From the NCBI GenBank assembly GCA_950097015.1, contig CATNEN010000015.1:1550001-1614000 (forward strand): a stretch of DNA of 64,000 nucleotides, read 5' to 3'. The position numbers were made by a program, and so were the translations under genes. The notes under the pieces are model-generated. The model was not told the origin of the DNA and ran no database searches. It worked only from the letters and a program-made list of their open reading frames with translations. This DNA is from Macrostomum hystrix. Lineage: Eukaryota; Animalia; Platyhelminthes. Shown piece after piece: positions 2,291-46,613 of the stretch. Every line of letters starts with the position of its first letter. Within the stretch, counting starts at the first letter, position 1.

Positions 2291-2460
2291 TGGGATTCTG
2301 TAGTTGTAATTCTTACAATGGGATTCTGTAGTTGCAATTCCTACAATGGAATTCTGTGGCTGTAATATTTACAGTGGATTATTGAACTGTAGTTCCTATA
2401 CAGTTGGATTCTGAAAATTTAGTTCCCACAATGGGATTTTCAAGCTGTAATTCCCACGGG
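2291..2460. repeat. Degenerate 28-bp tandem repeat just after the stop codon
   Basis: Unit TGGGATTCTGTAGTTGTAATTCTTACAA, about 6 diverging copies. Confidence 0.75.
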
Positions 2461-18824: not shown

Positions 18825-19180
18825 TCACTTGCAGCTGCGGCAGCCGCAGGCCTGGATCACCTGGTACTTGAAGGTCCTGGTGGCTCCACCAGCTGAAATG
18901 CGAGTTCGGAGAAACGCGATGATGAATGACCGGCTTGAACTACAAGGCTAAGCCAGAACTAAACTAAACTAAGATCATCACTCACGGCAAGACAGCAGGG
19001 TCTCCATGGTGACGGTGGCGGTCGGTTGGCAGCAGGCGCACTGACTGACCAGCATGCCGGTGGTCTCGCTGACGTAGGCGCCGCTGGAACAGCCACCGGC
19101 GCAGGCGGTCAGAGCAATTGCCTTGGCGGACACGCAGTCGCCCAGTCGGAGCTGCTTGGCTTCCGTGGCCACCGGCTTGC
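18825..19180 (-). other. C-terminal cystine knot (CTCK) of the giant mucin
   Basis: CKPV...CVS...CAGGCSS...CACCQPT...LSC|PGGATRTFKYQVIQACGCRSCK*, completed by a final 68-nt exon that the ORF track misses. Confidence 0.9.
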
Positions 19181-22100
19181 AACTTGAAGGCGCCTCGGTG
19201 GTTGTAGCGTTAGTAGTGGTCGTGGCAGCCAGGGTTGTTGTGGTGACGGCGGCGGTTTTGGTTGTGGTCGTGGCCGGTGTGGTCGTAGTGGTGGTCGTGC
19301 AGGTCTCGATCATCTCACAGACAACGTTGCCGGCAGCCAGGTTGCGCACAGCGTAGCCAGCCGGACAGGCGTAGCTGCAGTGGACGAAACCGGAGCGGAT
19401 ACACCTGGAGCCGACGTCGGTGATGTTACGCATGGACTCGGAGCCGCACGGCAGGCGGCAGAGGTGCAGAGTGCACATCGGCACGGTGGTGGTGGTAACG
19501 GCGGTGGTAGTTGTCGTGACTGGAGCAGTGGTAGTTGTCACCGGCTCGCAGTAGCAGCAGACATTGCCCTTCGGCGCCGGAGCCCTTCCGTTGGCGCAGG
19601 TGGCCGGGCAGGCGGTGACCTTCTCCACCAGCTTGGTATCGCCGGACGAGGTGCGCTGGCACTCGAGCGCCTTGCACGGGCCGTCGGACCACACGGAGTC
19701 GAGCGGGTGTTTCACACCGTTGTACTCGCAGTACTTGATTGGGACGCACTCGCAGCACTTGCCATCAGCCGGGTCGTCGTTCTTCATCACGTAGCCAGCC
19801 GGGCAGGAGGACAGGTGGCAGCCGGACTCCTTGCAGACGGCGCCCTTATCCTCTGTGCACTGGCAGATACGGCACTTGTCGCGCCAGGTCTTGCCGACCG
19901 GGTACTTCTCGCCGTCCTGCACGCACGGGCAGGTTGGCACGCACTTGCCTGTAGACTCGTCCATGTACATTCCTCTGGGACAGGCGCAACCAGGCTTGCA
20001 TGTTGCTAGGCAGGCGTCAGACATCTTGCGGTGCTTGCAGGTCTTGTGGCAGTCCTTGCACGGTGTCCACTCCATGCCGCCCGCTGAATGAGGGACAGTT
20101 GATTATTTTTTAGGTAAGATGTTCAGGTTTACTATTTACACTCATGTAAGGACCATTGGTACGATAATCTAGAAGTTATCTAAGCAACCAAGGCACCATG
20201 TGAGAATTCCCAGCTCAACTCACTGCAGTTGGAGCATCCCTCGCGCTCCGTGTTCACTTCGCGCACCAAGCCGCCGGCTGTGCACATGACGTCGGTGCAG
20301 TTCTTCTCGCTTGGAATCTTCTCGCCAATCTGTTAAAATTTATTTTCATGGTGAAAGTTCGAGTAAGCCGAGTCTTCTTCGTTTTAAGAGGCTGGAAAAA
20401 GTCGAGAACTTACCTTCAGCACACGGCTCTGAACGCTGTAGTAGCATGGGCACTCGGTGCGCGGGATGCACTTGCCGCTGCTGAGCACCATGCCCTCAGG
20501 ACAGGTGCAGCCCGGCATGCAGGCGGCGCCAGTCGGGCACTCAGTCTTGTCGCATGTCTTCACGCAAGTGCAGTTGGTTGGCACCATTGGCGACTTGCAC
20601 TCCGGTGGGCAGCCGTACACGCGGATGTTCAGTCCGGCAGCCAAGTCGGATCTAATGCGCTGGATGTTAACGCGAACTGCGAGCACATCGATGAGGTCCG
20701 CCTTCAGCAAGGCTAGCCGCACTCGCTGGTATTCGCCGAACTTGTCGCCCATGTTCCACAACCGAATGGCTCCCTTGGCATCCTTGACCGGGTTGAAGGC
20801 TCGGTTGTCGGAGCTAACATCAACGGACACTGAGCGAATGTTGTACGGGCTGATGTCGATGTGTGACAGCTGGACAATATCTCTGAACCGCACGCTGAAT
20901 GATGGGCTCGCATCGCTAGAAGACGATCGCCAGCCTGTTGAAGCAGGTGTCGCGTTGTCCACAGATCTGCCATCTTCAGTTGACGAAGCATCGAAGCGCA
21001 GGAAGAAGCCGCTCGAAACGTCGCTGACAACCTTGTCGCACACTGGAGGCGGCGTAGGAGCCAGGGTTGTGGTGATCAGCTCGGTTGTGGTTGTTACTGG
21101 CAATGTTGTTGTAGTCACAATCTTGGTGGTGGTTGTGATGGGAACTGTGGTGGTCGGCCTTGGCGATGTGCAAACGCCTGCTCGGCAGTTGCTCCAGATC
21201 TTGCCTCCCTTCATTGAGTCCCATCGACACTGGCACTCTCTGCAGTCGCCCATGTCGCACCATTCGTCCAGACGGATGTCAGTGATGGTTCCGTTTCTAA
21301 ATTTGCACTGGCAGGCCCTCAGACATGTGTCCGAGCTTGGGTACTTGACACAGTAGCCCTTCATGTTGTTTCGATATCCGGCTGGGCAGATTGATGAACC
21401 ACACTTTGACAGAATATTCTGGCACAGAGTGCTCGGGTTCTCTGGCTCTGAGAAGGTCAGAGATCTCATCTCATCGCATGTGACCTCCTTCAGGCAGTTG
21501 CTTGGAATTGGTGACTTGCAGTCAATTGGCGGTGTTGTGGTGCAGCCAGTTGTGTCCTTCACGCAGAACCGATCAACCTTGGAGTAGCCATCCGGGCAGC
21601 AGGTCACAGTCTTAGCAATGCACTCGAACTGCTCCGCGATCGAACCCTTGAAGTCAGTCAGCTGAACTGAGGCAGTGCCGCCTGGGGCTCGTAATTGAGC
21701 GTTTTTACCGCAGCCAAGATCCAGCAGACAGGTTTCTTTGCATGCTGAAGCGCTCGTTGTAGTTGTGGCTGCAGTTGTTGTAGTGGTTGTTGTTGTGGAC
21801 GTAGTTGTTGGCGTCGGTGTTGTTGTTGTAGTGGTTGGCTCGGGTGTTGTTGTTGTTGTCGGAGGCAGAGTTGTTGTCGTCGTTGGTGCAGGCGTGGTGG
21901 TAGTTGTTAGTTCTGGTGTTGTTGTTGTTGTCGGAACTGGTGTCGTAGTTGTTGTTGTTGCTGTAGTAGTAGTTGTTGTTGCGGGTGTTGTTGTCGTTGT
22001 TGGTGCAGGCGTGGTGGTGGTTGTTGTTGTTGGTGTTGTTGTTGTCGTTGTTGGTGCAGCCGTGGTGGTGGTTGTTGTTGTTGGTGTTGTTGTTGTCGTT

Positions 22101-25100
22101 GTTGGTGCAGGCGTGGTGGTGGTTGTTGTTGTTGGTGTTGTTGTTGTCGTTGTTGGTGCAGCCGTGGTGGTGGTTGTTGGTGTTGTTGTTGTCGTTGTTG
22201 GTGCAGGCGTGGTGGTGGTTGTTGTTATTTGCGGCGTTGTTGTTGTTGTTGAAACTTTAGGCGTGGATGTCTTGTCCTTAAGCATTTCAGTTACTGTAGT
22301 GATTGGAGTCGTTGCCGTCGTAACTGGTGTTGTGGTTGTTGTCGTTGGCTTGGGTGTTGTAGTAGTAGTTGTTGCTGCAGTAGTTGTTGGAGCCGGAGTA
22401 GTGGTTGTGGTTGTCGTCGTCGGCTTGGGTGTCGTGGTTGTTGTTGTAGTTGGTGCTAGTGTTGTTGTTGTTGCAGGAGCAGCTGTTGTTGTGAACCGCG
22501 GAATTGACGGTGGTGTAAATGGAGGCCTTTGCGTTACGGTTGAAGTTCCAGCGGTGTTTGTGTTGATTCCTGACAGTTTGCAGACCTTTAGGCTAATTGT
22601 CACAGTGACATCAGATGAAGTTGTATAGCTAAGGTTTGTGAACCTGATCTTCGTGATCTTGGCTCTTGGTGAAACTTCGAAAGTAAGTCCAGAAGAAATA
22701 GTTCCCTTCGGCTTGCCGACTTCATTAATTGGAGTCCAAGCAGTCTCGCCAGCATACGTATACTCGGCAACAACTGAGCCGGCCACGGACAAATCAACTC
22801 GAACCTGAAAGTTTTGAGAAATAGTGCTTAGATAATCAGGAATCGTCATTAGTAAAATAAAATGACTGTGTTGAAAGCTGAATACCCACCTGTGCCAGCT
22901 TAAGCCAGCTGTACATGCGGTCGGTCAGAATCTCAATGCTTGGAGACTTAACAGAAGATGGAATAGTCCACTTGTTTCCTGAGAACGATCCTCCATTGAC
23001 AGTGATGGCTGTCGCTGGGATGTACTGAATGTTATTTACAGCCTCCTCGAGAGTGTCACAGTCAATAACTGCTGTAGTCGTCACTGCCGCCTTTGTAGTT
23101 GTAGTTGTAGTTGTAGTTGTTGTTGGCTTCGGAGTTGTGGTAGCGGTAGTTGTGGTTGTGGTTGTCGGCTTTGGTGTCGTGGTGGTGGTTGTGGTGGTTG
23201 TCGGCTTTGGTGTCGTGGTGGTGGTTGTGGTGGTTGTCGGCTTTGGTGTCGTGGTGGTGGTTGTGGTGGTTGTCGGCTTTGGTGTCGTGGTGGTGGTTGT
23301 GGTGGTTGTCGGCTTTGGTGTCGTGGTTGTGGTTGGTGCAGGCGTGGTTGTTGTGGTTGTGGTTGGTGCAGGCGTGGTTGTAGTTGTTTTTGGCGCCGGC
23401 GCAGTAGTCGTTGTTGGCGCCACTGTGGTTGTTTTGATAGCGGCTGTTGTCGTCGGCTCTGGGACACAAAGGAATACTTCCAAGTGCACCTTAAAGTGTG
23501 TCTGTGTGACGTCCTTCGGCTCCTTCAGCAGAACCTTCAAAGACATGATTCGCGATGCTGACGGAATGTAGATGTCCTCATTGCCATTGATTCCAGCTGT
23601 TGTGGACTCAGGGAATCTGGTGTAAGACTTCTCCTTGTTGTACTGAACCATCAGGTAGGCTGTCTTGGCATTACCAACCAATCTGATCTTCTGAACGATC
23701 GGGGCGGAAGAGAGTAATGGGCTCTGCATCAGATCAACTGTGATCTCTGGATGGCTCGCGTTGGCAGCTGGCACGACCGCCTTCCAACCTCCTCTGTTTG
23801 GTCTGACGCTGGCAGCATCGAAAGCCTCGGACACTGGGCGAACTCGGATAGCACTGTCCGGGACGACTGATGGCTGTCCCATAACCTCCTGCATCGTGGA
23901 TCCCAGAGGGCAGACAGATGGTGCCGCGGTTGTCGTTGTTGACGGCTTCGGTGTTGTTGTAGTTGTTGTTGTGGCAGTTGTAGTTGTTGTTGTCGGCTTC
24001 GGTGTTGTTGTAGTTGTTGTTGTCGCCGTGGTAGTTGTTGTCGTCGGCTTTGGCGTTGTAGTTGTGGTTGTAGTTGTTGTCGGCTTTGGCGTTGTAGTTG
24101 TTGTGGTAGTTGTGGTTGTTGTCGGCTTTGGTGTAGTGGTGGTGGTTGTGGTGGTTGTCGGCTTTGGTGTCGTGGTGGTGGTTGTGGTGGTCGTCGGCTT
24201 TGGTGTCGTGGTGGTGGTCGTGGTGGTTGTCGGCTTTGGTGTCGTGGTTGTGGTTGGTGCAGGCGTGGTTGTTGTGGTTGTGGTTGGTGCAGGCGTGGTT
24301 GTAGTTGTTGTTGGCGCCGGCGCAGTAGTCGTTGTTGGCGCGACTGTGGTTGTTTTGATAGCGGCTGTTGTCGTCGGCTCTGGGACACAAAGGAATACTT
24401 CCAAGTGCACCTTAAAGTGTGTCTGTGTGACGTCCTTCGGCTCCTTCAGCAGAACCTTCAAAGACATGATTCGCGATGCTGACGGAATGTAGATGTCCTC
24501 ATTGCCATTGATTCCAGCTGTTGTGGACTCAGGGAATCTGGTGTAAGACTTCTCCTTGTTGTACTGAACCATCAGGTAGGCTGTCTTGGCATTACCAACC
24601 AATCTGATCTTCTGAACGATCGGGGCGGAAGAGAGTAATGGGCTCTGCATCAGATCAACTGTGATCTCTGGATGGCTCGCGTTGGCAGCTGGCACGACCG
24701 CCTTCCAACCTCCTCTGTTTGGTCTGACGCTGGCAGCATCGAAAGCCTCGGACACTGGGCGAACTCGGATGGCACTGTCCGGGACGACTGATGGCTGTCC
24801 CATAACCTCCTGCATCGTGGATCCCAGAGGGCAGACAGATGGTGCCGCGGTTGTCGTTGTTGTCGGCTTCGGTGTTGTTGTAGTTGTTGTTGTCGCCGTG
24901 GTAGTTGTTGTCGTCGGCTTTGGCGTTGTAGTTGTTGTTGTCGCCGTGGTAGTTGTTGTCGTCGGCTTTGGCGTTGTAGTTGTGGTTGTAGTTGTTGTCG
25001 GCTTTGGCGTTGTAGTTGTTGTGGTAGTTGTGGTTGTTGTCGGCTTTGGTGTAGTGGTGGTGGTTGTGGTGGTCGTCGGCTTTGGTGTCGTGGTGGTGGT

Positions 25101-28100: not shown

Positions 28101-31100
28101 CTTTGTTGTTGTTGTTGTGGTAGTTGTTGGAGCCTTTGTTGTGGTTGTTGTGGTGGTTGTTGGAGCCTTTGTTGTTGTCGTCGTTGTTGTTGCTGGTGGT
28201 GCTGTTGTTGTTGTTGTCGTTGGGGCCTTTGTTGTTGTCGTTGGAGCCTTTGTTGTTGTTGTGGTAGTTGTTGGAGCCTTTGTTGTGGTTGTTGTGGTGG
28301 TCGTTGGAGCCTTTGTTGTTGTTGTTGTTGTTGTTGTCGTCGATACCTGCTTGAAGCACCCAATCACGCTGATCGAAAGTTTGTAAGTGACATCACTTGG
28401 CACCTTTGTTTCCTCCGGAACAATTCTCAGACTGCTAATGCTTACATACTTAGGCAGCTCAATGTCCTTATCAGCGGGTAACACTTCGGACTTCGATGGA
28501 TAGAATGTGTACTCTCTGGATCCGGACAGAATATAAGAAATGAGCACACTCTTAACGTTACCGGTGATGCGGATCGTCTGGACCACAACCGGCTTGTTAA
28601 GTCCGCCATTAGTCAAGTCCACTGTGACGTACGGCACGCTGGATTTTTTCAGCTCAATTCCGGGACCGCCCGTTCGGACATCGTCAACCTTGACAGCGGA
28701 AGATGATGGAGACACGGAGATACTTCCTGAATGGATGGCAGTGAAGTCCTTCATGCCATCATTCCATGGACAGTAAGCTGGCGTTGTTGGTGCTGCAGTT
28801 GTTGTCACTTTGGCGGTCGTTGTCGCAGTTGTTGTAGTTGGTGCAGTTGTTGTTGTAGTCGTTGTCGGAGCTTCTGTCGGCACCTGCTTGAAGCAGCCGT
28901 TCACTGTTACAGTGAATTTGTAAGTCTTGTCACTGTCAACGATAGTTGAGCTCGGCTTCACCCTGATCTTTGTTACTGTGATGTAGTGGGGCAGCTCAAC
29001 CTCTTTATTTGCAGGAACCTCAGTCGACTTAGACGGGTAGTACTCAAACTCGGTCGAACCGACTCTCATGAAGGAGACGTGCAAGGTTTTGACATTGCCA
29101 GTAACTTTAATTCCTGTCACGATCTCGCCTGTCCTCTTTCCTCCTTCTGTCAGATCAACTGTGACGTATGGTTCGGCAATCTTTTCCAGAACGATTCCAC
29201 CAGACTTTGGTCTCAGAGTGTCAATTGAAACCTTAGCGCTGATGGGGCTAACCTGGATGCTTTCGCTGCTGATTGATTTTGGACTCTCCATACCATCAAC
29301 AATCGGACACTTTGCGTTTGTTGTCGATGGTGCAGCTGTAGTTGTGGACGCGGTTGTTGTTGTGGTTGTTGTTGCTGTTGTTGTTGTTTTTGTTGTTGTA
29401 GGAGTTGTAGTCGTCGTCGGTGCTTTTGTTGTTGTAGTTGTAGTTGTTGTTGTTGTTGGAGTTGTTGTTGTTGTGGCAGTTGTTGTTGTTGTAGTTGCCG
29501 GGGTTGTTGTCGTTGGTACAGTGACAGTCGTTGTTATGACTTCCTTGAAGCAACCCAGAACAATGACATGGAACCTGTAGTGAGTCACGCTAGGACTATC
29601 GGCTGTGAATGGCACAATCTGTACCTTGGCTAGTCTAGCATTCGGCGAGATGTTGATCGGAGTGTTTCCATTCGTAACATGGCCAGAGCCTTCTGGAACA
29701 GAAACCCACGTCTTCTCACCCGCGTATTGAATCAGGACCAGCACTTTTTGAACGTTGCCAACCACGCGGATCTGCTCAATAAGAGGAGCAGGCTTTGCAA
29801 GGCCGTTGGCCGTCAGGTCGATGGTGACGTTGGGTCTCGGCTGTCCAGCAGACGGAACGGCCACCTTCCAACCGCCAAGACTGCTTCTAACATTATGAAC
29901 AGCGCTGACTGACTCAGGTCCGCCTGAGATAGCAGAGTCTGGGATAATAAGCTCGTTCTTGAGACCATCGACATCACAGACTGAAATGCGCAACGGTTTC
30001 GATAAATTAGATCTCAACAATATTTCTACTAAAAGTATAGTATAACACATGATTTTCGCTCCTCACCTGGGGCAGAAGTTGTGGTGGTAGTAGTTGTTGG
30101 CATTGTAGTAGTTGTAGGGGTTGTAGTGGTAGTAGTAGTCGGCTTAGGTGTTGTGGTTGTTGTTGTAGTCGGCTTAGGTGTTGTTGTGGTTGTTGTAGTT
30201 GTAGTCGGCTTAGGTGTGGTTGTGGTTGTTGTTGTTGTAGTCGGCTTAGGTGTGGTTGTGGTTGTTGTTGTTGTAGTCGGCTTAGGTGTTGTTGTGGTTG
30301 TTGTTGTTGCTGTTGTAGTTGGCTGAGGTGTGGTTGTTGTTGTCACAACCTTAGTGGTTGTTGTATACGGCGCGGCCGTTGTTGGAGTCGTGGTCTTATC
30401 CTTCGCCGCTTCGGTTGTTATTTTAGTAGTTTGAGTTGTTGTAGTTTTAGCTGGTGTTGTTGTCGTAGTTGGAGCCTTAGTAGTTGTTGTGGTTGTTGTC
30501 GGAGCACCTGTTGTAGTTGAGAACGACTTGAAACAAGCGTAGACGTGAACATGGAACTTAAAGTGCGTTGCATCTGGCGACATTGGTGTAACCGGCTCGA
30601 TTCTGATTGCAGCGATGTTGCGGCGCGGAAGGAAGTACTGCGGATTGTTGCCCCTGAGCAGCTCCACACTGCGTGGATATTGTGTGAAGTTGTCTCCAGG
30701 CTTCTCTTGGATCAGCAGCTTGTAAAACATAACGTTTCCAGTCACGGAAACTCGGTCTGTGTACTGCGGCTGCCTGTAACCTCCCTCGGTCAGATCAATG
30801 ACGATGTACGGCTTTACATCCGATGGAGTCTTCGGCACTGTGACTCTCCAGCCGTCCTTTGACGGTCTCGCCTCGGTCGGGCTGCTTAGATGATCCGGCT
30901 TACCCTTGATGGCCGAGTCCGTGATCATTGTAGGTGTGTCCATTCCCTCCGTGATCTCGCATGCTAAAATGTAAATAATGTGTCACTGAGTTAGCACAGT
31001 CCTTAAGGCATTTGAATCAAGCGCGATTTAACAGGATTATTGTTATAAGTGTTTATTGAATGTCTGAAACGCTTACGCGGCAGGGTGGTACCCGCTGTTA

Positions 31101-37100: not shown

Positions 37101-40100
37101 GCCATTGAATGTGCAGCTTCTTGTGCAGGTCTTCTGAGCGAAACAGTGCTTGGCACCTCCGTAGGTGGCGCTTCTGACTTGGGCATCGCCGTAGCCTGGC
37201 AGAGCCTCCGAGCAGGTGCACTTCGGCTCGGTCTTGAACAGTCCCTTCGACAGGCAGAACAGGTTCTGCTCGTCCAGGCTGCCAATGGTTTCGTTGCAGG
37301 GCAGCTCACACACCTTGAGCTCGGTGCAGCTGGTTGTGCAGCCACATCTGCAGCTGGCGTCAAAGCTGGCCTTGACGTCCTTGTCAGTCTGGGTTTGCCA
37401 AGTCGATTGACATGTCAGTCTTGTGCAATAAGACTAGCTACACAAAAGCTACACAAAAATCATTTTAATGCATATAAATAAGTAGCTAAAAAGCGGATAA
37501 CTTCTCCAGCAAATCTTCAAAGACTCATACCGGGTACTTCTTCTGGCAGGTCTCCATGCACTGCTTCTTCTCGACGTCGCCGATGGCCACGCTCTTGCAC
37601 TCGACCAGGGCCGCTGTGGTGCAGGAGCAGACGCGCTTGCATGATGTGCCAACGGCTGTCTCAATCCAGGTCTCGTTGATCTGGAAAATATGCAATAGTT
37701 CAACAATTGACTAATCAGTTCATAAGTGGTAGTTTTGGAAGAGTCGAAATAACTCGTATATAAAAACGATTGCTTCAAAATACGCACCGCCTTCTCCACC
37801 GTGCGGTTAGCAACAGGATCCAGGTAGTGGCACACCCGCTTGGGCGCAACAGTTGTCGTGGGAACGCCAGTTGTCGGCGGTCTTGTCACGCACGATGGGC
37901 AGCAGTCGGCTGTCACCATGGTGGAGCCAGCCTGTGGGGTGGGGACAGGTAAATTTAGTCACGAGTACAAAGTGGCGCTCACTCGAAAGACTCGACCATT
38001 CAAGCAACTTGGTCAAGATTTTTTTGCACCTACCGGACAGATAACGCTCTTGCAAGGAACGCGACCCAGGTTGGTGACAGTGTTATTGGCGCAGGTGTAC
38101 CGGATGCAGTCCACAACCCAGACCTCGCCAGCTGTGCGGATCTTGCCGTCAGGCGAACGGCAGGTGCAGTCCTCGGACTTGACGCAGTGGTTGGTAGAGT
38201 TCATTCGGTAGCCGGACGGGCACTGGCAGCCGCTCTCGCACGGGAACTTGCCCTCCGAGCTGCACTCGGGCTCAATGCTGTGGCACTTGCGGCACTTGCG
38301 CATGCAGTCGGACGACTCCATTGGCGGCGGGCACTTGGGTGTGGTTGTAGTCGGCGGCGCAGTGGTTGTTGTGACCACTCGCGTTGTGGTGGTGGTGCCG
38401 CACGAGCACTTGCAGCAGGCGTCGCCAGAGAAGTGCACAATGGAACAGCTGCTTCCACACTCGATGCTGCAGGACTTCTTGCGGAACCAGACGCCGGACT
38501 CGCACACCTGGCTGATGCACTCGCTGATGACCTGCTTGTCGCCATTGGCGCAGATCGGCTTGGTTGTTGGAGCGACAACTGTTGTGCTCACTTCGAAGCA
38601 GGCTGAGATAAGCAAGCCCGACACGGACGGGTTGACCTTGGCGTCAGCTGAGCGCGGCAGTGTCACTCTGACAGCGGTGGCGGAGACTCCGTCAACAGTG
38701 CCATTGCTAAAGCCGAGAGACACAACGCCGCTCGAAGACGGACCGGCGACCTGCTTGGAGTACCAGATATCACTGCCGCTGGTGAACTCGACTTCCACAG
38801 AGCGGGCGCCTGTGACGATCAGCTCCAGCTTGGTGATGATTGTTCGGCTGCCAGGGCGGGGTGTGATGGCAAACACCAGCCTCGGCTGAGCGTCCGATGA
38901 ATCCGGCGACCAGCTGCTTCCAGTCGGGGCGCCCTTCAAGGCCTTCAGCCGGTCGATGTTATTGCTGCTGGCGCGCATCTCGAACTTAGATCCGGAGTCG
39001 CTAGCCAGAGTGATCTCGTGATGCGTGCACTTGGTCAGGGTGGTTGTGGTCGGCGTGACAATCACGGTAGTTGTGGCCAGTCGCTCGCACTCGCAGCAGC
39101 GCGTCGGGTCACTGGGGAATTGACGCAGGATGTAGCCTGGCAAGCAGGTGACGTTGCACTGCTTGCTAGACGAGATCACACCCTTGGTGCAGGTGTAAAC
39201 GGCGCAGCCGGATCTCCAGGTGGAGCCCTCCGAGCGCTTCACGCCGTCTTTGTCCAGACAGCCAGTCGGGGGCGTTGTCGGGTTCACCTCGCAGCGGCAG
39301 CAGCTTCCGGCCGGCTGCACCAGCCTGTAGCCGGGTGCGCAGGTGGTCAGCTCGCAGATTGGCACGCAGGTTCTCGCGCAGTTCAGCTGGTATTGGCAGT
39401 TCTTGTCGCAGTCGGCGCCCTTGACGCGGAACACCCGACCCAGCGGCTGGTTGTCCGGCTTGCAGACACACTCGGTTTCGCTGACGCAGGTGCCAGCAGC
39501 AGACAGGATCTTACCCTCCGAGCACACCTTCGACTTGTCCAGGCAGCACTTGCCCTCGGAGTCTGGCCGGACGCCATCGGGCAGTTTGCAGGTGCCTCGG
39601 CCGGCCAGCACGTCGTCGCAGGTTCGGGTGCATCGGCAGTCGACGCGCTCCATTCCTGCGGCGCAGACTGGCGTTGTCGGCACCGGCGTTGTTGTGGTGG
39701 TTGTGCTGCACAATGGGCAGCACTTTCCGGACACGGAGATGGCCTTGCTGCCAGGCGGGCAGGTAGTTGAGCACTTGGGCGAGCACTTAATGTCATTGTT
39801 GGCGCACTCGCATACCTGGCAGTCGACCTCCCACTTCTCACCGGGCTGAAAAACATAGGCGAAAACATCGTGTTTTCATATAAAATAAGAAGCAAATGTA
39901 CTTCATATCTTACTAAGGTCTCGGCAGTAATGCGCATGGTCATGTGTACTCAGGAGTCACGCAATTGGCGCGTGAAAATTGCGCCCCCAACCTCCTGCTC
40001 CCGCAGCGGTGCGCAAAAAAACATTTTTTACTCTTGGCGCAGGAAAAGCATTGTAAACTGAGACAATGGAAATTTAATCCGCCCGCGTTGCTAAAATATT

Positions 40101-43100
40101 TTCCCGTCTGTCCCGGGAATCAATTACCACCACTTGATTTTTCTTTCTCTTACATTTGTCGCCGCGCAGCTGCCCGCTGGGTGTGCCGCCATATGGTGAC
40201 CGCGCTGCCAGGAGCCTCCCCACTACACCTGACAGGCCCAGAGCTGCCGCTGCGCACCGCCTCCTCACCTTCCTCAGGGCGAGGGGAAACCTCTCGAAAG
40301 ACAATTCAATTTTTCCAACGCAGAAAACTGTCGAAATTTTCTTCTAACTAAATTTGAAACCACCCACGCGTCGTTTCGATGCGAAATGTATTATTAACTA
40401 GCATTACAATTTTGTATCTCAACTTTCAAAACAAGCTGAGAATGACTAAGCTGATTAAAATTAGGATTTACCTTTCGCAGCGCCTTGGCCACATTATCGT
40501 AGCACATGCAGTGCGCCTCAGGCACGCATTTCTCGCCGTCGGAGACCATGCCAGCTGGGCAGACGCAGCCGCTGACACAGTCGAACTCGGACGCCGAGCA
40601 GCCAGACGGGTTCGTGTAGCGCTGGTAGTGGCACCGCTTGGGGCACTTCGGCGCGCAGTCGACGCGCATCTTCGGCGCCGGGCAGGACGCCGTGGAAGTG
40701 GTGGTCAGCGGAGTTGTTGTCGTTGGCGGCAGCGTGGCTGGCTCGGTGGTGGTACAGTTGCCATGGCAGCAGTGCTCATCGTCACCGAACATGCACTCGC
40801 GGTTGCCGTCGCAGCGCTTGGCGCAGTATCTGCGCTCACCTCGGCAGATGATCAGGCCCGGCCCGGTACAGAATGCTGAATCGAGGAAAGGCTCAGATAA
40901 TACATTCTAGACTATTGCAGGCTTTTGGAAGCGGACAAATTAAATAGACTCAGTCTAACCTGTTGTAGTCGGTGCCACGGTGGTTGGGAATGTGGCGCAG
41001 TCGCCCAGGTAGTACGGCTTGCAGTCCATTTTGCCGGCATTGCAGGTGCACTCCTGGCACTTGTGGATGATCTTCTTACCGTAGGCCAGCTTCTTGCCGT
41101 CCACGATGCAGCTGCACTCCTCGCGCTTCTTGCACACGCCGTCTTCCAGGAACTCGCCGTCCTGGCAGAAGCAGCCCTCGACGCAGGTGCTCTTGCAGTC
41201 GGAGGTGATGCTCTGACCCTTGGACAGGTCGATGCAGCGCTGGGGACAAGTCGAGCCGCAACGCTTGTAGACCATGGTCTTGGGGCACATGACGGCTGCA
41301 AGATTGTGCGCATTCGATCATGTCAAATTCAGCTTTTTCAGTATGTACTGCGAAGGTCTTCAATAACGAAAAACTTACGGCAGTCGTCAGGATTTCTCCA
41401 TGCGATCTTGACGCCCATCTCGTTACAGCGCAGCACGTACTGGGACACGGCCGTACAGTAGCAGAGACAGTCATCGAGCTTGCAGGCGCAGGTGTCCATG
41501 ACGCACTTGTCGTAAAACTCGCTGACCTCCACCTTGGAGTGGCAGGATTTGAACTCGGCACTGCGAAGGATGCTGCACTTCTTCTCAGACCATCGCTTTC
41601 TCTCGCTGGAGCAGGGCGCGATTGGCGTCGGTGGCGGCTTCGGGCAGGTGTTGCGCACCTTCCACGAGTCGGCAAAGGCGACCTTGTCCTCAACAACCTC
41701 GCCAGTGCGGGCTCGCAGATCGTCGTCGCGCTTGTTATTGAAGTTGCCACAAAGACCGCAGACCTTCTCCATCCAGTTGGGCTGCAGGGTGACGGACACC
41801 TTCATCTTCATGTCCCACTGGACTTCGATACCGTCTTCGGTGCGGAAGAACAGGAAGAAACCGGCCGGGTAGATCTCGTACTTGGCCTTCGGCAGGGTGA
41901 CTGGCCAGTAGAGGTTTCGGCTGATGATGGGGTCAGTGCCGCGAACCAGGTGGACAACCACATCTCTGTAGGTGATCTTCACCGACTTGGTGCAGGACAT
42001 GCCCTCTGCGCCGCACTTGATGTTCTCACCGGTGATGCGGAAGGTGCCAGCAGTGCCGCCGCAGTAGTCCTCGGCCAGCACGTAGCTGCAGGTGCCCATA
42101 AAGTCGTAGTAGCGACCGTCGAAGGTCTCGTAGTGAGGATCACCCCAGACTCGGCAGGTGCTCGGGCACTTGTTGTTGGTACACTGCCAGCTACCTTTGC
42201 GGCACATGCAGTAGTTGTAGCAGCGGGTGCTGCCTCGTGGCACCACGGAGTTCTCGGCGTACACCTGGCCAGCCATGGCGCACGGACAGTTGTCCTTGTC
42301 GACGCACTTGCCCTGGTGAAGAACCTGACCCTCGCGGCAAACGCAACCGCCATGCTTGCAGGAGGACTTCGGGCACTCGATGTTGATGTTCTCGCAGGAG
42401 CGCTGGCAGTCGCTGCACTCAGACCAGACCATACCAGCCGGACAGGTGTTGCTGACGGTGCAGGTCAGATTGGTGCACTCCCACTTGCCATCGCGGCAAG
42501 TGCAGTTGTTGCACTTGTCCTTTCGTGCCTCACCGTTGTTGTAGGAGACTCCGTTGAACATGCACTTGCACTGGTTTCGGGGAACGCAGGTTCCCTTCTC
42601 CTCATCCAGAGCCTGGCCCGACGGGCACTGGCAGCCCTCGACGCACTCCTCGATGCAGGGCGACGCCTCCACTCGTCTGCAAGTCTTGCCGCAGTTGCTG
42701 CCGCACTCCTGGTACTCCATGGTTGGCGGGCACTTCACCGGGCACAGGGAATCTGAGCGCCAGTTCAGCACCTTGCCGTCCAGGGCGCAGGATCGGGCGT
42801 ACGAGGCGAACGCTGTGCACTCGCACTGGGACATGGCGCCCTTGCGCCTGGCGCCACAGCTGCACACGTCGTGCTTGCACTGCTCCAAAGCCCATTTGGG
42901 GTCCACGCGTGAGTGGCAGGCCTTGAAGACGGACTCGGTGTACAGCCTGTTGCACACTGTGGTGGCGTAGGTGTCGAACTCTTTGCTGGTGGCGCAAGCG
43001 CCGTTGTACACATACCTGGTCATTGCGTCGCAAGTCGGATTTGTCTTCCAAGACTTGGCAAACTCGCCAACATCCTTGATATCAATACCAGTCGGCGAGA

Positions 43101-46100
43101 TGGTGTCGTCCTTCATGTCGTTGTTGAAGTTGCCGCACAGACCCGTCACCTTGTTGCGGTAGGCCTGGCTGAGTCGGATCTGGATGCGAGTGCGGCCGTT
43201 CCAGAGCAGGTCGAATCCCTTGTTGGTCTCAACGCGGAGCATGCTGGTGGACACCAGGCGGATGGTAACGTCATTCACGGTTACGGGCAGGCTAACGTAG
43301 GCTGAGTTAACCTTGACACGGTCGAAGCTCTCCAGCTTAATGGTGTGCTGCTTTTCGCCGGAGCCCATCTGCAGAGTGACAAGCTTGGCGCACAGGACAT
43401 CCGTGACGCTGTTGCAGTACTTGTTCTCTACGTAAACCGCCACTGGATAGTCCAGAGAGTCAGAGGCGGACGGCTGCGGCATCATCATGATGTACTCGCA
43501 GTGGCCCTCAAAGCTGAAGTGCCTGCCGTCGAAGGTCCTGTAGGTGGGGTCGCCGGACACTGTGCAATAGCCGTAGCACTCGTCAGTTGGTGAGCACTTC
43601 CAAGTGCCGCCCCGGTCGCAGACGCACTGCTCGCACTTGTGGAAGTACTTGGAGCCGACTGGGAAGCTGCGACTGTCTCCAGCCCGTTTGCAGGGGCAGT
43701 TGTCTCGGACAACGCACTTGTGGCCGTCCCAGAACCGGCCGGCTGGGCAGAAGCACCCGTCAACGCAGTAGCTGCCGCACTCCTCATCCACCGCATTTGT
43801 GCCGCACCTCTGGTTGCAGTCGTGGCTGCACTCGCTGAATACCTTGCCGTCTGAACACTTTGGTGCCGCTGAAATATTAACAAAAACAGAATATAACTAG
43901 TCAGAACTACTCAGTCAGAACTACTCAGTCAGAACTACTCAGTCTCAGAACTTCTTAGTCTCAGAACTACTCTCTGAACTACTCAGACACACTAACTATC
44001 AATGAGTGGGTGGCATTTCAACTCACGGCACAGGTTGCTCTGCCTCCAGTTGATCACGATGCCCTGCTGAGTGCAGGCTCTGGAGAACAGAGTGGCCGAG
44101 TTGCACCTCTGCGCGCTGCAGAATGTCTCGTTGCCGTTCAGCATGCAGGTGCAGACGTCCTTCATGCACATGGACTCGTACACGCTACTGTTGACGCGGC
44201 CGTGGCAGGCGGAGAAAGTGGCGCTGCCGGATCGCAGGATTGAGCACAGGCTCTGAGCAGACTCCAGCAGGCCTGTAGACCTAGAGCGCAGCACGGCGCA
44301 TGGGTGCTCAGCATCGGCCCGAATCAGTGGGTAGACGCTTCTGTCCTCCGGCGACTCGTCGCGCCAGGCCTTGGCGAAGTCAACCACGCGGGTGAGCGGC
44401 TTGTTCATCAGGTCTGTGAAGTCGTTGCCCGGCTTGCCGTCGAACCGGCCGCAGAGGCCGCACACGGTGCGCGACATGGTCCTGGGCGCGTACACGTTGA
44501 TGTTGCGGTCACCATCGAAGGTGATGGCCAGGTCTGTTGACGGTAGGTCCGTGGCATTTATTTAATCATTCTAATTAAGCTATTTAAATACGTGGTGGCA
44601 TTGAAAAACATTTCACGCGTTCATAACCAACCGTCAAGACCACGAACGGTGATGTGGTTCGCAGTGTTGGACACCGATATGATGCCGGCAATTGTTGGCA
44701 TCTCCACTGGCTTGCCGTTGACCAGCACGCTGCCACCTGGCATGATCTCAACCTTGGCTGGACCGGCCAGGATCTTCAGCGACATCTGGCAGCGGGTCTG
44801 GGCGGCGTCGGCGCAGTTGCGGCTGCCGTTGATGAAGACTTGGTACTTGGCCTCGCTGTTGACGCAATCCTGCAGCAGGACGTAGGAGCCGTGCACCGGG
44901 AAGTCAAAGTACTTGCCATCGAATGTGAGGAAGTGGCTGCTGCGAAAGGCGCTGCACACGGCGCTGCTTCTGTAGCGCGTGTTGTTCACGGCTGAACGGA
45001 GAGTTGCATTGTTTGAGTGATGTCATAACTAGGTAGCTATTTATAGCGACAGCAGCAAACGGTGATTCATTGAAATGAGATCTCTCACCTCTCACGGCCA
45101 CAAAGGCGGTGGAGTCAGCGGCGTACAGAGCGGCCACCTGGCACAGGTCGCCATGGTAACCATCTGGGCAGCGGCACTTGTTGGGCGCTAGGCAGGTGCC
45201 AACCGAGTTGCAGTTGTTCTCGCACAGCGCTGTTTAAGAGGCAACAGTTTTGTGTTAATAGAGATTGCACGTTAATTTACCTTTGGCTTTATAGCGTTCA
45301 TCAGACTTAGGCACTTACGCAGCTCGCACTTGGTGCCCCGGTAGCCCAGGTTGCAGACGCAGCTGCCGCTGACGCACTTGCCGTTGGAGCCGCAGCCGCC
45401 AACGCAGACGCTGGCCGTTGTGGTGGCCACCCGCTGGCACTGATCGCCGTCGAAGCCGGCGGCGCAGCGGCAGGTGTTGGGTGCGATGCAGACGCCGCCG
45501 TTAGCGCACTCCTTGGCGCAGACGGCTGCAAACGGTCAAGGCGGCGTTTGAGATTGCGCTCAATATACTACTGTTTGAGTAGAATAATTCTCCTGATTAA
45601 AATACAGGACTTTAAGAAGCATTCTATCTCCTCGAAAATAAACAACAAATGTGACGTCCTGTCCGAACACTTACGCGAGTTGCAAGTGGCGCCCCTCCAG
45701 CCGGCGCTGCAGCTGCAGTTGTTGGGCGCAACGCACATGCCGTTGTCGCACTTCGGACTGCAGACGGCCTCAGAGCAGCTGGACCCGATCCAGCCCGGGC
45801 AGCAGGTACGGAATTTTCTGGGTGGGGACAAAGGCGGAGGATTTAGGCGGTTTATATCTAATCATTTTACTTCCGTTTGCTCTTATGAACGAAATTCAGT
45901 TTCAATAACTATTAAATTTTGCACTGAAAAAATACGAGCCGTAATTCTGCATCGCAAAAATTATTTTTGAACGCTCGAAGACTAAAATTTATGACAGCTA
46001 ACTCTAGGACACAATAAATTTCAGTAATTAAGTACTGTGCCATGATTTCAAGGCTAAAACTGTGTAAAATTCGTTCTCCTGAATTGACTCAGCTTAACTT

Positions 46101-46613
46101 GCCTTTCAATTCGGCACCTAGTTTGACTTCACGAGACTAAAAGCGCGCGGGAAGCGGACTTTAGTATATTCGACTAGCTAATTTCGACCCCTTAATAGAG
46201 TATCATTAATGCTACCAATGAGATAAGCTCTGATTTACTGACTTTCTGATCGAAATATTCAACAAGTAAGAGGAGCTTCAACCAAGACCAGGTGTTGCAT
46301 CAGAGCACTCACATCAGCACCCGGCAGTTAATGCGATCGGCATGGGTGGACAGCACCGTGTAGCCCTTGTCCTTGGCGTCCGAGCACTTCACAAAGTCTT
46401 CAGTTCGCGTGCCATTGCAGAAGTTGTCGCGGCTCATGCTGCCCATGGCACTGGCGGCTGATGAGCAGTACCTGAGTGATGTCACGGGGTTGATAATCGC
46501 TCAGATGCATAGACTAGCTAGAATAACAGAAGAGCAAAGTTATGATTGGCAATTTAAACTTACAACAGCACTGCTGAGAGCAGCAGAGCACTTGGGTACC
46601 TGCCAGGTCCCAT
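18825..46613 (-). CDS. Giant secreted gel-forming mucin / hemolectin-SCO-spondin superfamily protein, 27 exons, 24,042 nt CDS (about 8,013 aa)
   Basis: Exons (minus): 46613-46564, 46471-46313, 45817-45675, 45525-45319, 45229-45089, 44991-44632, 44533-44027, 43868-41379, 41295-40960, 40875-40472, 39845-38034, 37931-37788, 37680-37531, 37388-37089, 36899-36540, 36441-35907, 35817-32630, 32490-31707, 31586-31077, 30963-30067, 29980-26030, 25938-25718, 25619-22890, 22804-20414, 20329-20224, 20083-18986, 18892-18825; all GT-AG and phase-consistent. Signal peptide MGPGRYPSALLLSAVLLYCSSAASA, EMI-like CCPGW, 4 EGF, 3 VWD (TFDG...GLCG), C8/TIL, LDLa, Thr-rich linkers and a terminal CTCK. Confidence 0.9.
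41379..44991 (-). other. Three VWD-C8-TIL assemblies (D1-D2-D'-D3-like)
   Basis: CSAFRSSHFLTFDG...CGLCGRFDG; CTVSGDPTYRTFDG...TGLCGNFNN; CRVWGDPHYETFDG...CGLCGNFNN; each is followed by C8- and TIL-like cysteine patterns. Confidence 0.92.
43903..43985. repeat. Short 14-bp intronic tandem repeat
   Basis: TCAGAACTACTCAG, about 5 copies. Confidence 0.8.

What the first reader, a model, noticed from the sequence alone, without database searches (positions are those of the whole stretch)
18825..46613. About 8,000-aa polymer-type mucin with about 20 discoidin-like beads on a Thr-rich string
Seen: the spliced ORF has a signal peptide, EMI-like and EGF domains, three VWD-C8-TIL assemblies, LDLa, VWC/TIL modules, and a CTCK. 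It also has about 20 modules of about 140-150 aa bounded by C..(D/E)GM...I.(D/S)..I and (V/I)xGC(F/Y), each separated by poly-Thr linkers. Established: VWD-D3 plus CTCK drive disulfide polymerisation in VWF and gel-forming mucins; hemolectin and SCO-spondin carry only one or two F5/8C domains; vertebrate MUC2/MUC5 interrupt their PTS regions with CysD domains. Inference: this is a gel-forming mucin in which divergent discoidin-fold modules replace CysD and could cross-link glycans or bind surfaces. It is a candidate flatworm mucus, glycocalyx or adhesion component. It lacks the TSP1 arrays of SCO-spondin and, as I recall them, the signatures of the described Macrostomum adhesive proteins.
Basis: partly seen in the sequence, partly recalled or inferred. 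Interest (0 to 1): 0.78.

Follow-up and report, generated by a model that had tools for sequence, protein, structure and literature searches.

The report
Flatworm giant mucin with discoidin beads
This is a real, roughly 8,000-residue secreted flatworm (Macrostomum) mucin-type protein whose sugar-carrying string is interrupted by 19-20 discoidin-fold "beads"; the design is shared with annelids, a chiton and the flatworm's own glue protein ap2, so it is an unstudied variant of a known kind, not something wholly new.

Summary
On the minus strand, a 27-exon, all-GT-AG model (ATG 46613 to TGA 18825) gives one open frame of 8,028 codons (21% Thr, 410 Cys). Confirmed parts are a signal peptide, EGF modules, a VWF/mucin-type D1-D2-D'D3 head (three VWD-C8-TIL), VWC/TIL modules and a C-terminal cystine knot. 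The 19 modules of 133-150 aa have two Cys each and are separated by Thr/Ser/Pro linkers. None passes Pfam's F5_F8_type_C cutoff, but their profile aligns end to end with the CASPR2 and factor VIII discoidin domains. An AlphaFold model (pLDDT 83) matches neuropilin b1, FVIII C2 and discoidin I at Z 12-13. A 20th, degenerate module lies upstream. The EMI and LDLa calls have only motif-level support.

It is not unique, however. Its M. lignano orthologue exists as partial unnamed models. Annelid and chiton proteins share the bead-plus-linker design. F5/F8 domains in lophotrochozoan mucin-like proteins are published. The repeat unit of an ap2-type glue gene elsewhere in this genome belongs to the same module family, as this scan had already noted for ap2. 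Where it is expressed and what it does remain untested.

The parts
18825..46613 (-). Whole coding region: 27 exons, 8,028 codons. Exons (high-low): 46613-46564, 46471-46313, 45817-45675, 45525-45319, 45229-45089, 44991-44632, 44533-44027, 43868-41379, 41295-40960, 40875-40472, 39845-38034, 37931-37788, 37680-37531, 37433-37089, 36899-36540, 36441-35907, 35817-32630, 32490-31707, 31586-31077, 30963-30067, 29980-26030, 25938-25718, 25619-22890, 22804-20414, 20329-20224, 20083-18986, 18892-18825
   Evidence: All introns are GT..AG and the frame is open throughout. Exons 1-20 are collinear with one M. lignano model.
46564..46613 (-). Exon 1: start codon and the hydrophobic core of the signal peptide (MGPGRYPSALLLSAVL.); the small-residue SSAASA stretch follows in exon 2
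   Evidence: Read from the sequence. 88% identical to the N-terminus of M. lignano P0152. No signal-peptide predictor was available.
45089..45817 (-). Exons 3-5: CCPGWxGxxC motif followed by three to four EGF-type modules
   Evidence: Pfam EGF_2, EGF_Teneurin and EGF. No EMI hit.
44027..44991 (-). D1 assembly: a VWD split by an intron, plus C8; CGLC motif at 44451-44462
   Evidence: Pfam VWD profile positions 1-101 in exon 6 and 108-152 in exon 7; C8 at 1.2e-12; motif.
41379..43868 (-). Exon 8: TIL, D2 (VWD-C8-TIL), VWC-like, TIL', D3 (VWD-C8); GDPH at 42133-42144 and CGLC at 41749-41760
   Evidence: Pfam VWD x2 (8.8e-74), C8 x2, TIL x3. PDB sequence search: VWF 2e-175, MUC5AC 6e-165, MUC2 2.5e-154.
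40472..41295 (-). Exons 9-10: TIL of D3, LDLa-like Cys motif (Pfam-negative), short PTS, TIL
   Evidence: Pfam TIL at 5.4e-10 and 8e-08. The LDLa stretch has no hit.
38034..39845 (-). Exon 11: VWC, Cys-rich modules, degenerate bead M0 (38592-39029), TIL
   Evidence: Pfam VWC and TIL. M0: hhalign E 6.5e-4; ESM Atlas neighbours are F5/8C clusters; AF2 pLDDT 72; Foldseek hits are CBM29, DOC, muskelin discoidin and CBM32.
35907..37931 (-). Exons 12-16: Cys-rich modules of unassigned type with short PTS stretches
   Evidence: No Pfam family. 67-82% identical to the M. lignano orthologue.
35402..35815 (-). Bead M1
   Evidence: Module profile 78 bits
34862..35284 (-). Bead M2
   Evidence: 147 bits; 93% identical to M. 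lignano
34403..34822 (-). Bead M3
   Evidence: 145 bits
33890..34318 (-). Bead M4
   Evidence: 137 bits
33284..33682 (-). Bead M5
   Evidence: 115 bits
32269..32824 (-). Bead M6, split by the exon 17/18 intron
   Evidence: The two halves hit profile positions 4-65 and 70-144 in adjacent exons
31141..31572 (-). Bead M7
   Evidence: 124 bits
30530..30961 (-). Bead M8
   Evidence: 161 bits; 87.5% identical to M. lignano
29547..29978 (-). Bead M9
   Evidence: 151 bits
28890..29309 (-). Bead M10 (the one folded)
   Evidence: AF2 pLDDT 82.8. Foldseek and VIA top hits are all F5/8C domains, Z 12-13.
28353..28772 (-). Bead M11
   Evidence: 171 bits
27237..27656 (-). Bead M12
   Evidence: 170 bits
26694..27113 (-). 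Bead M13
   Evidence: 166 bits
26148..26567 (-). Bead M14
   Evidence: 168 bits
25395..25936 (-). Bead M15, split by the exon 22/23 intron
   Evidence: Hits to profile positions 4-138 (read through the intron) and 70-144
24384..24833 (-). Bead M16
   Evidence: 145 bits
23463..23912 (-). Bead M17, a recent tandem duplicate of M16
   Evidence: About 800 nt at 98-100% identity at an offset of 921 nt
22577..23060 (-). Bead M18, weak, split by the exon 23/24 intron
   Evidence: Only 12.8 bits, E 5e-06, in the in-script model
21149..21742 (-). Cys-rich insert of about 190 aa between the last PTS and M19; type unassigned
   Evidence: No Pfam hit at E<=10
20606..21040 (-). Bead M19, the one closest to canonical F5/8C
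   Evidence: Pfam F5_F8_type_C E 1.3e-5, 25.8 bits, against a cutoff of 28.2
18825..20600 (-). C-terminal Cys-rich tail: TIL-like module, small VWC-like exon 25, TIL, VWC, short PTS stretches, CTCK (about 19199-18825, split by the last intron)
   Evidence: Pfam TIL 7e-07 and VWC 3.6e-05. Cys_knot 27.1 bits, above the cutoff of 24. Splice site and final CxCxxC read directly.

Best explanation
The locus encodes one secreted, disulfide-polymerising mucin-type glycoprotein of about 8,000 residues. It comes from a Macrostomum flatworm closely related to M. lignano.

Shown: a VWF/gel-forming-mucin head (D1-D2-D'D3) and a C-terminal cystine knot flank a central string of about 4,800 residues. In that string, 19 (plus one degenerate) discoidin-fold beads alternate with Thr/Ser/Pro linkers.

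Inferred from how VWF and MUC2/MUC5 work: the CTCK dimerises tail to tail and the D3 assemblies link head to head, giving long linear polymers. There is no furin-type R-x-K/R-R site in the first 1,600 residues, which includes the D2/D' region, so D1-D2 probably stay attached, as in mucins. The linkers are densely O-glycosylated and extended. The folded beads take the place of CysD, acting as protease-resistant spacers and as non-covalent cross-linking or ligand-binding (glycan or surface) nodes that set the properties of the gel.

The most likely role is as a structural polymer of a secreted mucus or sticky secretion. Which gland makes it is not known.
For: One gene:
- All 26 introns are GT..AG, 24 of them 83-189 nt, and the frame stays open over 8,028 codons.
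- Four domains are split across introns: VWD-D1 and beads M6, M15 and M18.
- One M. lignano model covers exons 1-20 collinearly at 63-93% identity.

Head and tail:
- Pfam finds VWD x3, C8 x3 and several TIL.
- The PDB sequence search gives VWF 2e-175 and MUC5AC, MUC5B and MUC2 at 1e-154 to 1e-165.
- Cys_knot scores above its cutoff.
- There is no TM-like segment and no furin-like site.

Beads:
- The module profile against PDB sequences hits the CASPR2 discoidin domain at 1.3e-4 and FVIII at 6e-3, both end to end.
- AF2 gives pLDDT 82.8.
- Foldseek returns 34 hits at E<=1e-3, and the top-ranked ones listed are F5/8C domains.
- VIA gives Z 12-13.2, rmsd 2.5-3.0 A over 120-130 of 140 residues.
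- Each bead has exactly 2 Cys, at its two ends, as in the F5/8C disulfide.

Linkers are 54-86% T/S/P.

Conservation: beads are 70-93% identical to M. lignano, while linkers vary in length.
Against: - There is no transcript, expression, glycosylation or multimer evidence. The tool that could fetch the M. lignano contig was closed.
- Continuity of exons 20-21-22 rests only on splice logic, short introns and the frame.
- No M. lignano model covering beads M9-M19 or the CTCK was found.
- No bead reaches Pfam's F5_F8_type_C cutoff.
- The ligand-binding loops could not be evaluated, so a lectin or cross-linker role is speculation.
- The intermolecular D3 cysteines were not mapped.
- M18 and M0 are weak.
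- Repeat copy number in PTS regions can be mis-assembled.
Confidence: 0.6

Rival explanations
1. It is a component of an adhesive or cement secretion (glue) rather than general mucus. On this reading it is functionally akin to adhesion protein ap2: the beads bind surfaces or partner glycans, and the D3/CTCK polymerisation supplies cohesion.
For: - The C39 locus of this genome has the published ap2 architecture: three VWD hits, giant T/S-rich ORFs, and a TSP-1 plus TIL tail.
- Its 218-aa repeat unit aligns end to end with this gene's bead profile: hhalign probability 80-88%, E 1.4e-5 and 3.6e-6.
- ap2 is required for attachment by RNAi (PMC6410801).
- Tandem discoidin domains occur in echinoderm adhesives such as nectin and Sfp1 (discussed in PMC6410801 and PMC7037938).
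Against: - Only ap1 and ap2 were identified as the adhesive proteins of the M. lignano adhesive organ (PMC6410801).
- This gene has a CTCK tail and a complete mucin/VWF head, unlike ap2.
- Its beads are diversified (median 25% pairwise identity), not homogenised as in ap2.
- There are no expression data. Its identifiers appear in no searchable paper.
Confidence: 0.28
2. It is the flatworm counterpart of hemolectin-type clotting or immune agglutinins: a VWD protein with F5/8C domains that seals wounds or traps microbes.
For: In protostomes, the mucin-related VWD protein carries F5_F8_type_C domains after three VWD-C8-TIL units (Lang et al. 2016, PMC4948705). [quoted passage not shown]
Against: - Hemolectin's defining '3+2' arrangement is not met. 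No VWD lies downstream of the beads.
- About 1,730 aa of PTS and 19-20 beads differ greatly from hemolectin's one or two F5/8C domains and its very small PTS.
- No VWD phylogeny was done.
Confidence: 0.08
3. The model is an artefact: the locus is two or more genes (for example a VWD-headed gene and a separate bead/CTCK gene), or the bead count is inflated by mis-assembly of repeats.
For: - Public M. lignano models stop after bead M8.
- M16 and M17 are near-identical over about 800 nt.
- No transcript data were available.
Against: - There is no in-frame stop, no internal signal peptide and no TM-like segment.
- The introns around exons 20-22 are 86 and 91 nt, too short for a terminator plus a promoter.
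- Split beads bridge exons 17/18, 22/23 and 23/24.
- The window contains no N.
- The M. lignano models are marked partial and end inside PTS.
Confidence: 0.04

Closest known systems
Vertebrate gel-forming mucins MUC2 / MUC5AC / MUC5B (and MUC6/MUC19, which lack D4)
   Same: D1-D2-D'D3 head with very strong sequence similarity. A long PTS interrupted by small folded Cys-containing modules. VWC modules and a C-terminal cystine knot. As in MUC6/MUC19, there is no fourth VWD.
   Different: The PTS-interrupting module has a discoidin (F5/8C) fold with one terminal disulfide, not CysD (Mucin2_WxxW), and no CysD was detected. There is an N-terminal EGF cluster. Extra Cys-rich modules lie between D3 and the PTS.
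Drosophila hemolectin and the protostome/lophotrochozoan mucin-like VWD proteins of Lang et al. 2016 (PMC4948705)
   Same: [quoted passage not shown] The paper states that the F5_F8 domain is characteristic of lophotrochozoan mucin-like proteins.
   Different: No '+2' C-terminal VWD units. 19-20 beads rather than a few, regularly alternating with long PTS linkers. The beads are a divergent sub-type below Pfam's cutoff.
Macrostomum adhesion protein 2 (Mlig-ap2 / Mhtx-ap2; PMC6410801, PMC8621496); ap2-type locus on C39 of this genome
   Same: A giant secreted protein with a VWD/TIL head, an LDLa-type motif, and a central array of one module family (hhalign probability 80-88% between the ap2 unit and this gene's bead) with Thr/Ser-rich spacers.
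   Different: ap2 has a TSP-1/TIL tail and no CTCK. Its repeats are homogenised (218-aa period here; 255 and 221 aa in M. lignano). Its head is not a complete D1-D2-D'D3. This gene has diversified beads and a mucin/VWF-type head and tail.
M. lignano PAA50248.1 (BOX15_Mlig026350g2, partial) / UniProt A0A1I8G0U9 and A0A1I8GY38 ('VWFD domain-containing protein')
   Same: Orthologue: 92% identity in D2-D3, 70-93% in beads M1-M8, collinear with exons 1-20.
   Different: These public models are partial (3,377-3,824 aa). They end in PTS after bead M5-M8, are unnamed, and appear in no searchable paper.
Annelid and mollusc bead-plus-PTS proteins: Dimorphilus DgyrCDS6478/6479/6481, Capitella CAPTEDRAFT_196226 and _219797, Liolophura 'mucin-2-like' XP_064614628.1
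   Same: The same module sub-type in arrays of 3-11, separated by T/S/P-rich linkers. TIL, VWC or CTCK are present in some.
   Different: Only 26-36% identical. The models are fragments or neighbouring gene models. A VWD head was not seen in the pieces retrieved. All are uncharacterised.
Echinoderm adhesive proteins with discoidin domains (sea urchin nectin, sea star Sfp1)
   Same: Multiple discoidin domains in a secreted adhesive context; Sfp1 also has VWD and C8 (as discussed in PMC6410801).
   Different: They have no PTS string between the discoidin domains and no D1-D2-D'D3 plus CTCK polymerisation frame. The comparison rests on the literature only and was not tested here.

Membership tests
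Gel-forming mucin / VWF-type polymer | Three N-terminal VWD-C8-TIL assemblies (D1, D2, D'D3) | tested here: met
   Pfam VWD x3, C8 x3, TIL. Collinear with VWF, MUC5AC, MUC5B and MUC2 D2-D'D3 at E 1e-154 to 1e-175.
Gel-forming mucin / VWF-type polymer | C-terminal cystine knot (CTCK) | tested here: met
   Pfam Cys_knot 27.1 bits against a cutoff of 24 on the exon-26 part. The remaining CxCxxC lies in the last exon.
Gel-forming mucin / VWF-type polymer | Long Pro/Thr/Ser (PTS) domains | tested here: met
   27 runs, about 1,730 aa; Thr 21.3% overall; linkers 54-86% T/S/P.
Gel-forming mucin / VWF-type polymer | Dense O-glycosylation and disulfide-linked multimers | not testable with these tools
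   Needs biochemistry.
Gel-forming mucin / VWF-type polymer | Intermolecular D3 cysteines | not tested
   Positions were not mapped. CGLC motifs were seen in D1 and D3, and GDPH at the start of the D3 VWD.
F5/8 type C (discoidin) domain | Pfam PF00754 at or above the gathering score (28.2 bits) | tested here: not met
   Only 2 of 15 beads hit at all; the best is M19 at 25.8 bits, E 1.3e-5. Some relatives' beads do pass: P0154, P0010, P0026.
F5/8 type C (discoidin) domain | Discoidin beta-sandwich fold | tested here: met
   AF2 pLDDT 82.8. The top Foldseek hits are FVIII/FV C2, neuropilin b1, lactadherin C2 and DDR2. VIA Z 12-13.2.
F5/8 type C (discoidin) domain | Sequence-profile similarity over the full domain, and Cys at both termini | tested here: met
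   The profile hits the CASPR2 Disc domain at E 1.3e-4 (3-143 against 10-152) and FVIII at 6e-3. C1 and C139 are invariant, with 2 Cys per bead.
F5/8 type C (discoidin) domain | Ligand-binding loops ('spikes') that bind sugar, lipid or peptide | not testable with these tools
Hemolectin-type '3+2 VWD' protein | Two further VWD-C8-TIL units after the F5/8C region | tested here: not met
   No VWD or C8 in any exon downstream of exon 9.
MUC2/MUC5-type mucin | CysD (Mucin2_WxxW) domains within the PTS | tested here: not met
   No such Pfam hit in any exon.
Macrostomum adhesion protein 2 (ap2) | C-terminal TSP-1 repeats | tested here: not met
   No TSP_1 in this gene. TSP_1 x4 or more is present in the ap2-type C39 locus.
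Macrostomum adhesion protein 2 (ap2) | Central array of homogenised repeats of about 220-255 aa | tested here: not met
   The beads here are diversified (median 25% identity) with irregular spacing. The module family is shared, however.
Macrostomum adhesion protein 1 (ap1) | C-type lectin, a single VWD, many calcium-binding EGF modules, Lys/Arg-rich regions | tested here: not met
   No C-type lectin hit, three VWD, and no KR-rich regions.
EMI domain | Pfam EMI match | tested here: not met
   No hit for exon 2 or exon 3. Only the CCPGWxGxxC motif is present.
LDL receptor class A | Pfam Ldl_recept_a match | tested here: not met
   No hit at E<=10. The six-Cys pattern with CDGxxEC..GDDExC is visible by eye.

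The most novel reading that the evidence does not exclude
Spiralia (flatworms, annelids, molluscs) share an unrecognised family of gel-forming mucins. In these, a dedicated discoidin-derived bead, mostly invisible to Pfam, plays the part that CysD plays in vertebrate MUC2/MUC5. The Macrostomum glue protein ap2 is a derivative of this mucin family, so flatworm temporary adhesion evolved from mucus. The beads may be lectins for the protein's own O-glycans, giving reversible self-cross-linking.
Probability: 0.3. Interest if true: 0.7.

Novelty: new variant of a known kind. Interest (0 to 1): 0.5.

Why it matters
This gives the first complete gene model for a spiralian mucin in which the glycosylated string is punctuated by discoidin-fold beads; the public orthologue stops at less than half its length. 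It also links that design by sequence to the repeat unit of ap2, the flatworm's RNAi-validated glue protein. If the beads bind glycans or surfaces, the protein would be a natural example of a polymer with built-in reversible cross-linkers. That is relevant to how mucus and bioadhesives are tuned, and to the evolution of mucins outside vertebrates. Macrostomum supports RNAi and in situ hybridisation, so the role can be tested directly.

Tried and rejected
- Pfam on all central exons at E<=0.01 gave nothing. At E<=10 only 2 of 15 beads touched F5_F8_type_C. The discoidin call therefore rests on profile-to-PDB and fold evidence.
- The EMI and LDLa claims found no Pfam support.
- The look-up of encoding contigs, needed for the M. 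lignano contig (to check conservation of beads M9-M19 and to compute dN/dS), was closed.
- The word-index protein search with exon 21 found no M. lignano counterpart. Only 8,000 candidates were scored, and poly-Thr words probably saturated the list, so this blank is uninformative.
- A literature search for the orthologue's identifiers found nothing. No supplementary files of Lang et al. 2016 are held.
- Being ap1 or ap2 itself was rejected on architecture.
- Antisense ORFs inside the gene have no Pfam family. They are by-products of GC-rich or low-complexity coding sequence.
- Upstream 'ORFs' at 3-11 kb are translated minisatellites.
- Rfam found nothing in the window.
- A VWD phylogeny against hemolectin, otogelin and SCO-spondin was not attempted. 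The length window of the word-index search excludes full-length relatives, and no joined query was allowed.

Full report
**Scope and rules followed**

All database, family and fold searches used single exons or single modules, given by window reference. The spliced 8,028-residue model was assembled only inside scripts. There it was used to check the frame, measure length and composition, scan for short motifs, and count modules with my own local profile. It was never sent to a database, family or structure tool, and that joined step is deliberately left out.

Yes. The gene lies on the minus strand, where very large stop-free stretches follow one another. Frame-compatible GT..AG junctions exist between every pair.

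It runs from the ATG at 46613 to the TGA at 18825 and gives one open frame of 8,028 codons.
- The alternative exon-2 acceptor gives 8,021 codons. The M. lignano orthologue supports the 46471 acceptor.
- 24 of the 26 introns are 83-189 nt.
- Composition is Thr 21.3%, Pro 8.3%, Ser 7.4% and 410 Cys. There are 27 PTS-like runs totalling about 1,730 residues.
- The window contains no N.

**2. Head and tail**

- Exon-by-exon Pfam finds EGF-type modules (exons 3-5) and a VWD split between exons 6 and 7 with a C8. Exon 8 carries two VWD, two C8, three TIL and a VWC-like module. Further TIL and VWC lie in exons 9-11 and 26.
- The D2-D'D3 exon matches solved VWF (E 2e-175), MUC5AC (6e-165), MUC5B, MUC2 (2.5e-154) and FCGBP collinearly.
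- The penultimate exon alone passes Pfam's Cys_knot cutoff (27.1 against 24 bits). The last 91-nt intron joins it to a 22-codon exon that completes the knot (...CGCRSCK, stop).
- No furin-type site occurs in the first 1,600 residues, and no TM-like segment anywhere.
- The N-terminus reads as a signal peptide. No predictor was available.
- No TSP-1 and no CysD is present.

**3. The beads**

- By eye and by profile there are 19 modules of 133-150 aa between 35815 and 20606.
- Each has exactly two cysteines, the first and the penultimate residue.
- 13 of 19 carry the C..(D/E)G(M/L) start motif and 17 of 19 the (V/I/L)x(G/A/L)C end motif.
- Three are split by introns: M6, M15 and M18. For M6 and M15 the two halves hit complementary halves of the profile in adjacent exons.
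- Pairwise identity is low (median 25%, maximum 79%), except for M16 and M17, a recent tandem duplicate.
- Linkers are 13-232 aa and 54-86% T/S/P. The last gap also holds an unassigned Cys-rich insert of about 190 aa.

**4. Are the beads discoidin domains?**

- Pfam alone would say no. Only 2 of 15 touch F5_F8_type_C, and the best (M19) scores 25.8 bits against a cutoff of 28.2.
- A profile of 15 beads aligns end to end with the CASPR2 discoidin domain (E 1.3e-4) and a factor VIII C domain (E 6e-3) among all PDB sequences.
- AlphaFold2 on bead M10, with the bead alignment, gives pLDDT 82.8 and pTM 0.79.
- Foldseek's best PDB hits are FVIII/FV C2, neuropilin b1, lactadherin C2 and DDR2.
- VIA-align gives Z 12-13.2, rmsd 2.5-3.0 A over 120-130 of 140 residues, including Dictyostelium discoidin I.
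- A 20th module upstream (38592-39029) is only weakly related. hhalign gives E 6.5e-4 and its ESM neighbours are F5/8C clusters. It folds, at pLDDT 72, as a galactose-binding-domain-like sandwich nearest to CBM29, DOC, muskelin-discoidin and CBM32. Its alignment was made of the discoidin beads, which could bias that model.

**5. Relatives**

- In this 220-Mb genome the bead profile hits strongly only in this gene.
- Against 1.84 billion representative proteins it finds only 236 at E<=1e-3. The bead is thus a rare, distinct sub-type of the very large F5/8C family.
- The best hit is the M. lignano orthologue: PAA50248.1, with UniProt A0A1I8G0U9 and A0A1I8GY38 ('VWFD domain-containing protein'). 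It has the same head, 92% identity in D2-D3 and 70-93% in beads M1-M8, and is collinear with exons 1-20.
- Those models are partial, at most 3,824 aa, and their identifiers appear in no searchable paper.
- Further relatives show the same bead-plus-PTS layout. These are a chiton 'mucin-2-like' protein (7 beads), the neighbouring Dimorphilus models DgyrCDS6478, 6479 and 6481 (30% Thr), Capitella 196226 (11 beads) and Capitella 219797 (5 beads plus a Pfam-positive CTCK).
- Some relatives' beads pass Pfam's F5_F8_type_C cutoff.
- The design is therefore spiralian, not flatworm-specific. Lang et al. 2016 already note that F5_F8 domains characterise lophotrochozoan mucin-like VWD proteins, and that hemolectin is a '3+2 VWD' protein with F5/8C domains in the middle.

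**6. Relation to the Macrostomum glue proteins**

The published ap1 (C-type lectin, one VWD, about 17 EGF, KR-rich ends) and ap2 (VWD/TIL/LDL head, 46 repeats of 255 or 221 aa, TSP-1 tail) are clearly other genes.

- A map of VWD loci led to C39:2.065-2.100 Mb. That locus has three VWD hits and giant T/S-rich open frames.
- It contains an array repeating every 218 aa that my bead profile matches over positions 1-144.
- Its tail has TSP-1 (at least four) plus TIL. This is the published ap2 architecture.
- hhalign between ap2-type units and this gene's bead profile gives probability 80-88% (E 1.4e-5 and 3.6e-6) over the full length. The boundary motifs are shared.

Head type and tail differ, but the bead-plus-Thr-spacer string is the same invention. 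Loci on C1, C7, C38 and C29 carry further variants.

**7. How it most likely works**

- Shown: the domain inventory and its order, the bead fold, the PTS composition, and conservation of the beads between two Macrostomum species.
- Inferred from VWF and MUC2/MUC5 biology: tail-to-tail CTCK dimers and head-to-head D3 links give linear polymers, and the linkers are O-glycosylated and extended.
- Inferred: the beads act as folded, disulfide-stapled nodes in the position of CysD.
- Whether they bind glycans (discoidin I and CBM32 do), surfaces or each other is untested.
- The role could be general mucus or a sticky secretion. The kinship of the bead with ap2 raises the odds of an adhesive context, but no expression data exist.

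**8. Verdict**

It is a new variant of a known kind: a protostome gel-forming mucin-like protein with F5/8C-type domains, here expanded to 19-20 beads regularly alternating with PTS, without the C-terminal VWD units of hemolectin. It belongs to a spiralian family that also includes the repeat unit of the ap2 glue. Interest is moderate, as an evolutionary and biomaterials lead that is directly testable in Macrostomum.

Noticed in passing
window 1244-14823: The upstream flank is a chain of minisatellite arrays with units of 17, 39, 21, 21, 21, 23 and 22 nt, up to 3.1 kb each and strongly strand-skewed in G/C. They create spurious ORFs of up to 1,042 codons on the plus strand.
   Followed up: partly
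window 23100-25000 (beads M16/M17): A recent tandem duplication: about 800 nt at 98-100% identity at an offset of 921 nt, covering a whole bead and part of its linker. Copy number here could vary between individuals or be mis-assembled.
   Followed up: partly
window 44451-44462, 41749-41760, 42133-42144: CGLC motifs lie in the D1 and D3 VWD domains. A GDPH motif (the sequence at which some VWD domains self-cleave at low pH) lies at the start of the D3 VWD. There is no furin-type R-x-K/R-R in the first 1,600 residues.
   Followed up: no
G000:C38:3262000-3282000 (+) and C38:3396000-3409000 (-); loci L011-L013, L015: Two paralogous loci about 135 kb apart, on opposite strands. They are built of Thr-rich linkers plus a related, more Cys-rich module (C..DGM..IPD..I...GCR.P | CL.GNV...LCY...I.P..K). 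Each module is split by an intron at the same place. The M. lignano relatives are auto-named 'Membrane-associated protein'.
   Followed up: partly
G000:C39:2065259-2100000 (+); loci L016-L018: An ap2-type glue gene: three VWD hits, open frames of 2,352, more than 3,333 and 2,004 codons rich in T/S/P, a homogenised bead-plus-spacer array with a 218-aa period, and a tail of at least four TSP-1 plus two TIL. It was not compared with the deposited Mhtx-ap2 sequence, which the tools do not hold.
   Followed up: partly
G000:C1:18403007-18416000 (+) (L021) and C7:4865000-4886405 (-) (L023): Two more VWD-headed loci with a 'DGTDEQ.C' LDLa-type motif, followed by Thr-rich open frames of more than 1,500-2,100 codons. 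These contain modules that start with C..DGM..I.D.DI. They look like further members of the bead-plus-PTS family.
   Followed up: no
G000:C2:1974849-1975265 (-): A VWD domain lies inside an uninterrupted open frame of 6,881 codons, another giant secreted-protein candidate. Only the downstream 20 kb was glanced at.
   Followed up: no
G000:C29:8209789-8221621 (+): A cluster of weak hits (E 0.015-8) to the second half of the bead profile. This may be another, more distant bead array.
   Followed up: no
proteins P0160, P0036, P0012 (Dimorphilus gyrociliatus DgyrCDS6478, 6479, 6481): Three near-adjacent annelid gene models: bead-plus-PTS arrays in the first two, then TIL-bead-VWC in the third. They look like pieces of one giant mucin gene split by automatic annotation.
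   Followed up: no
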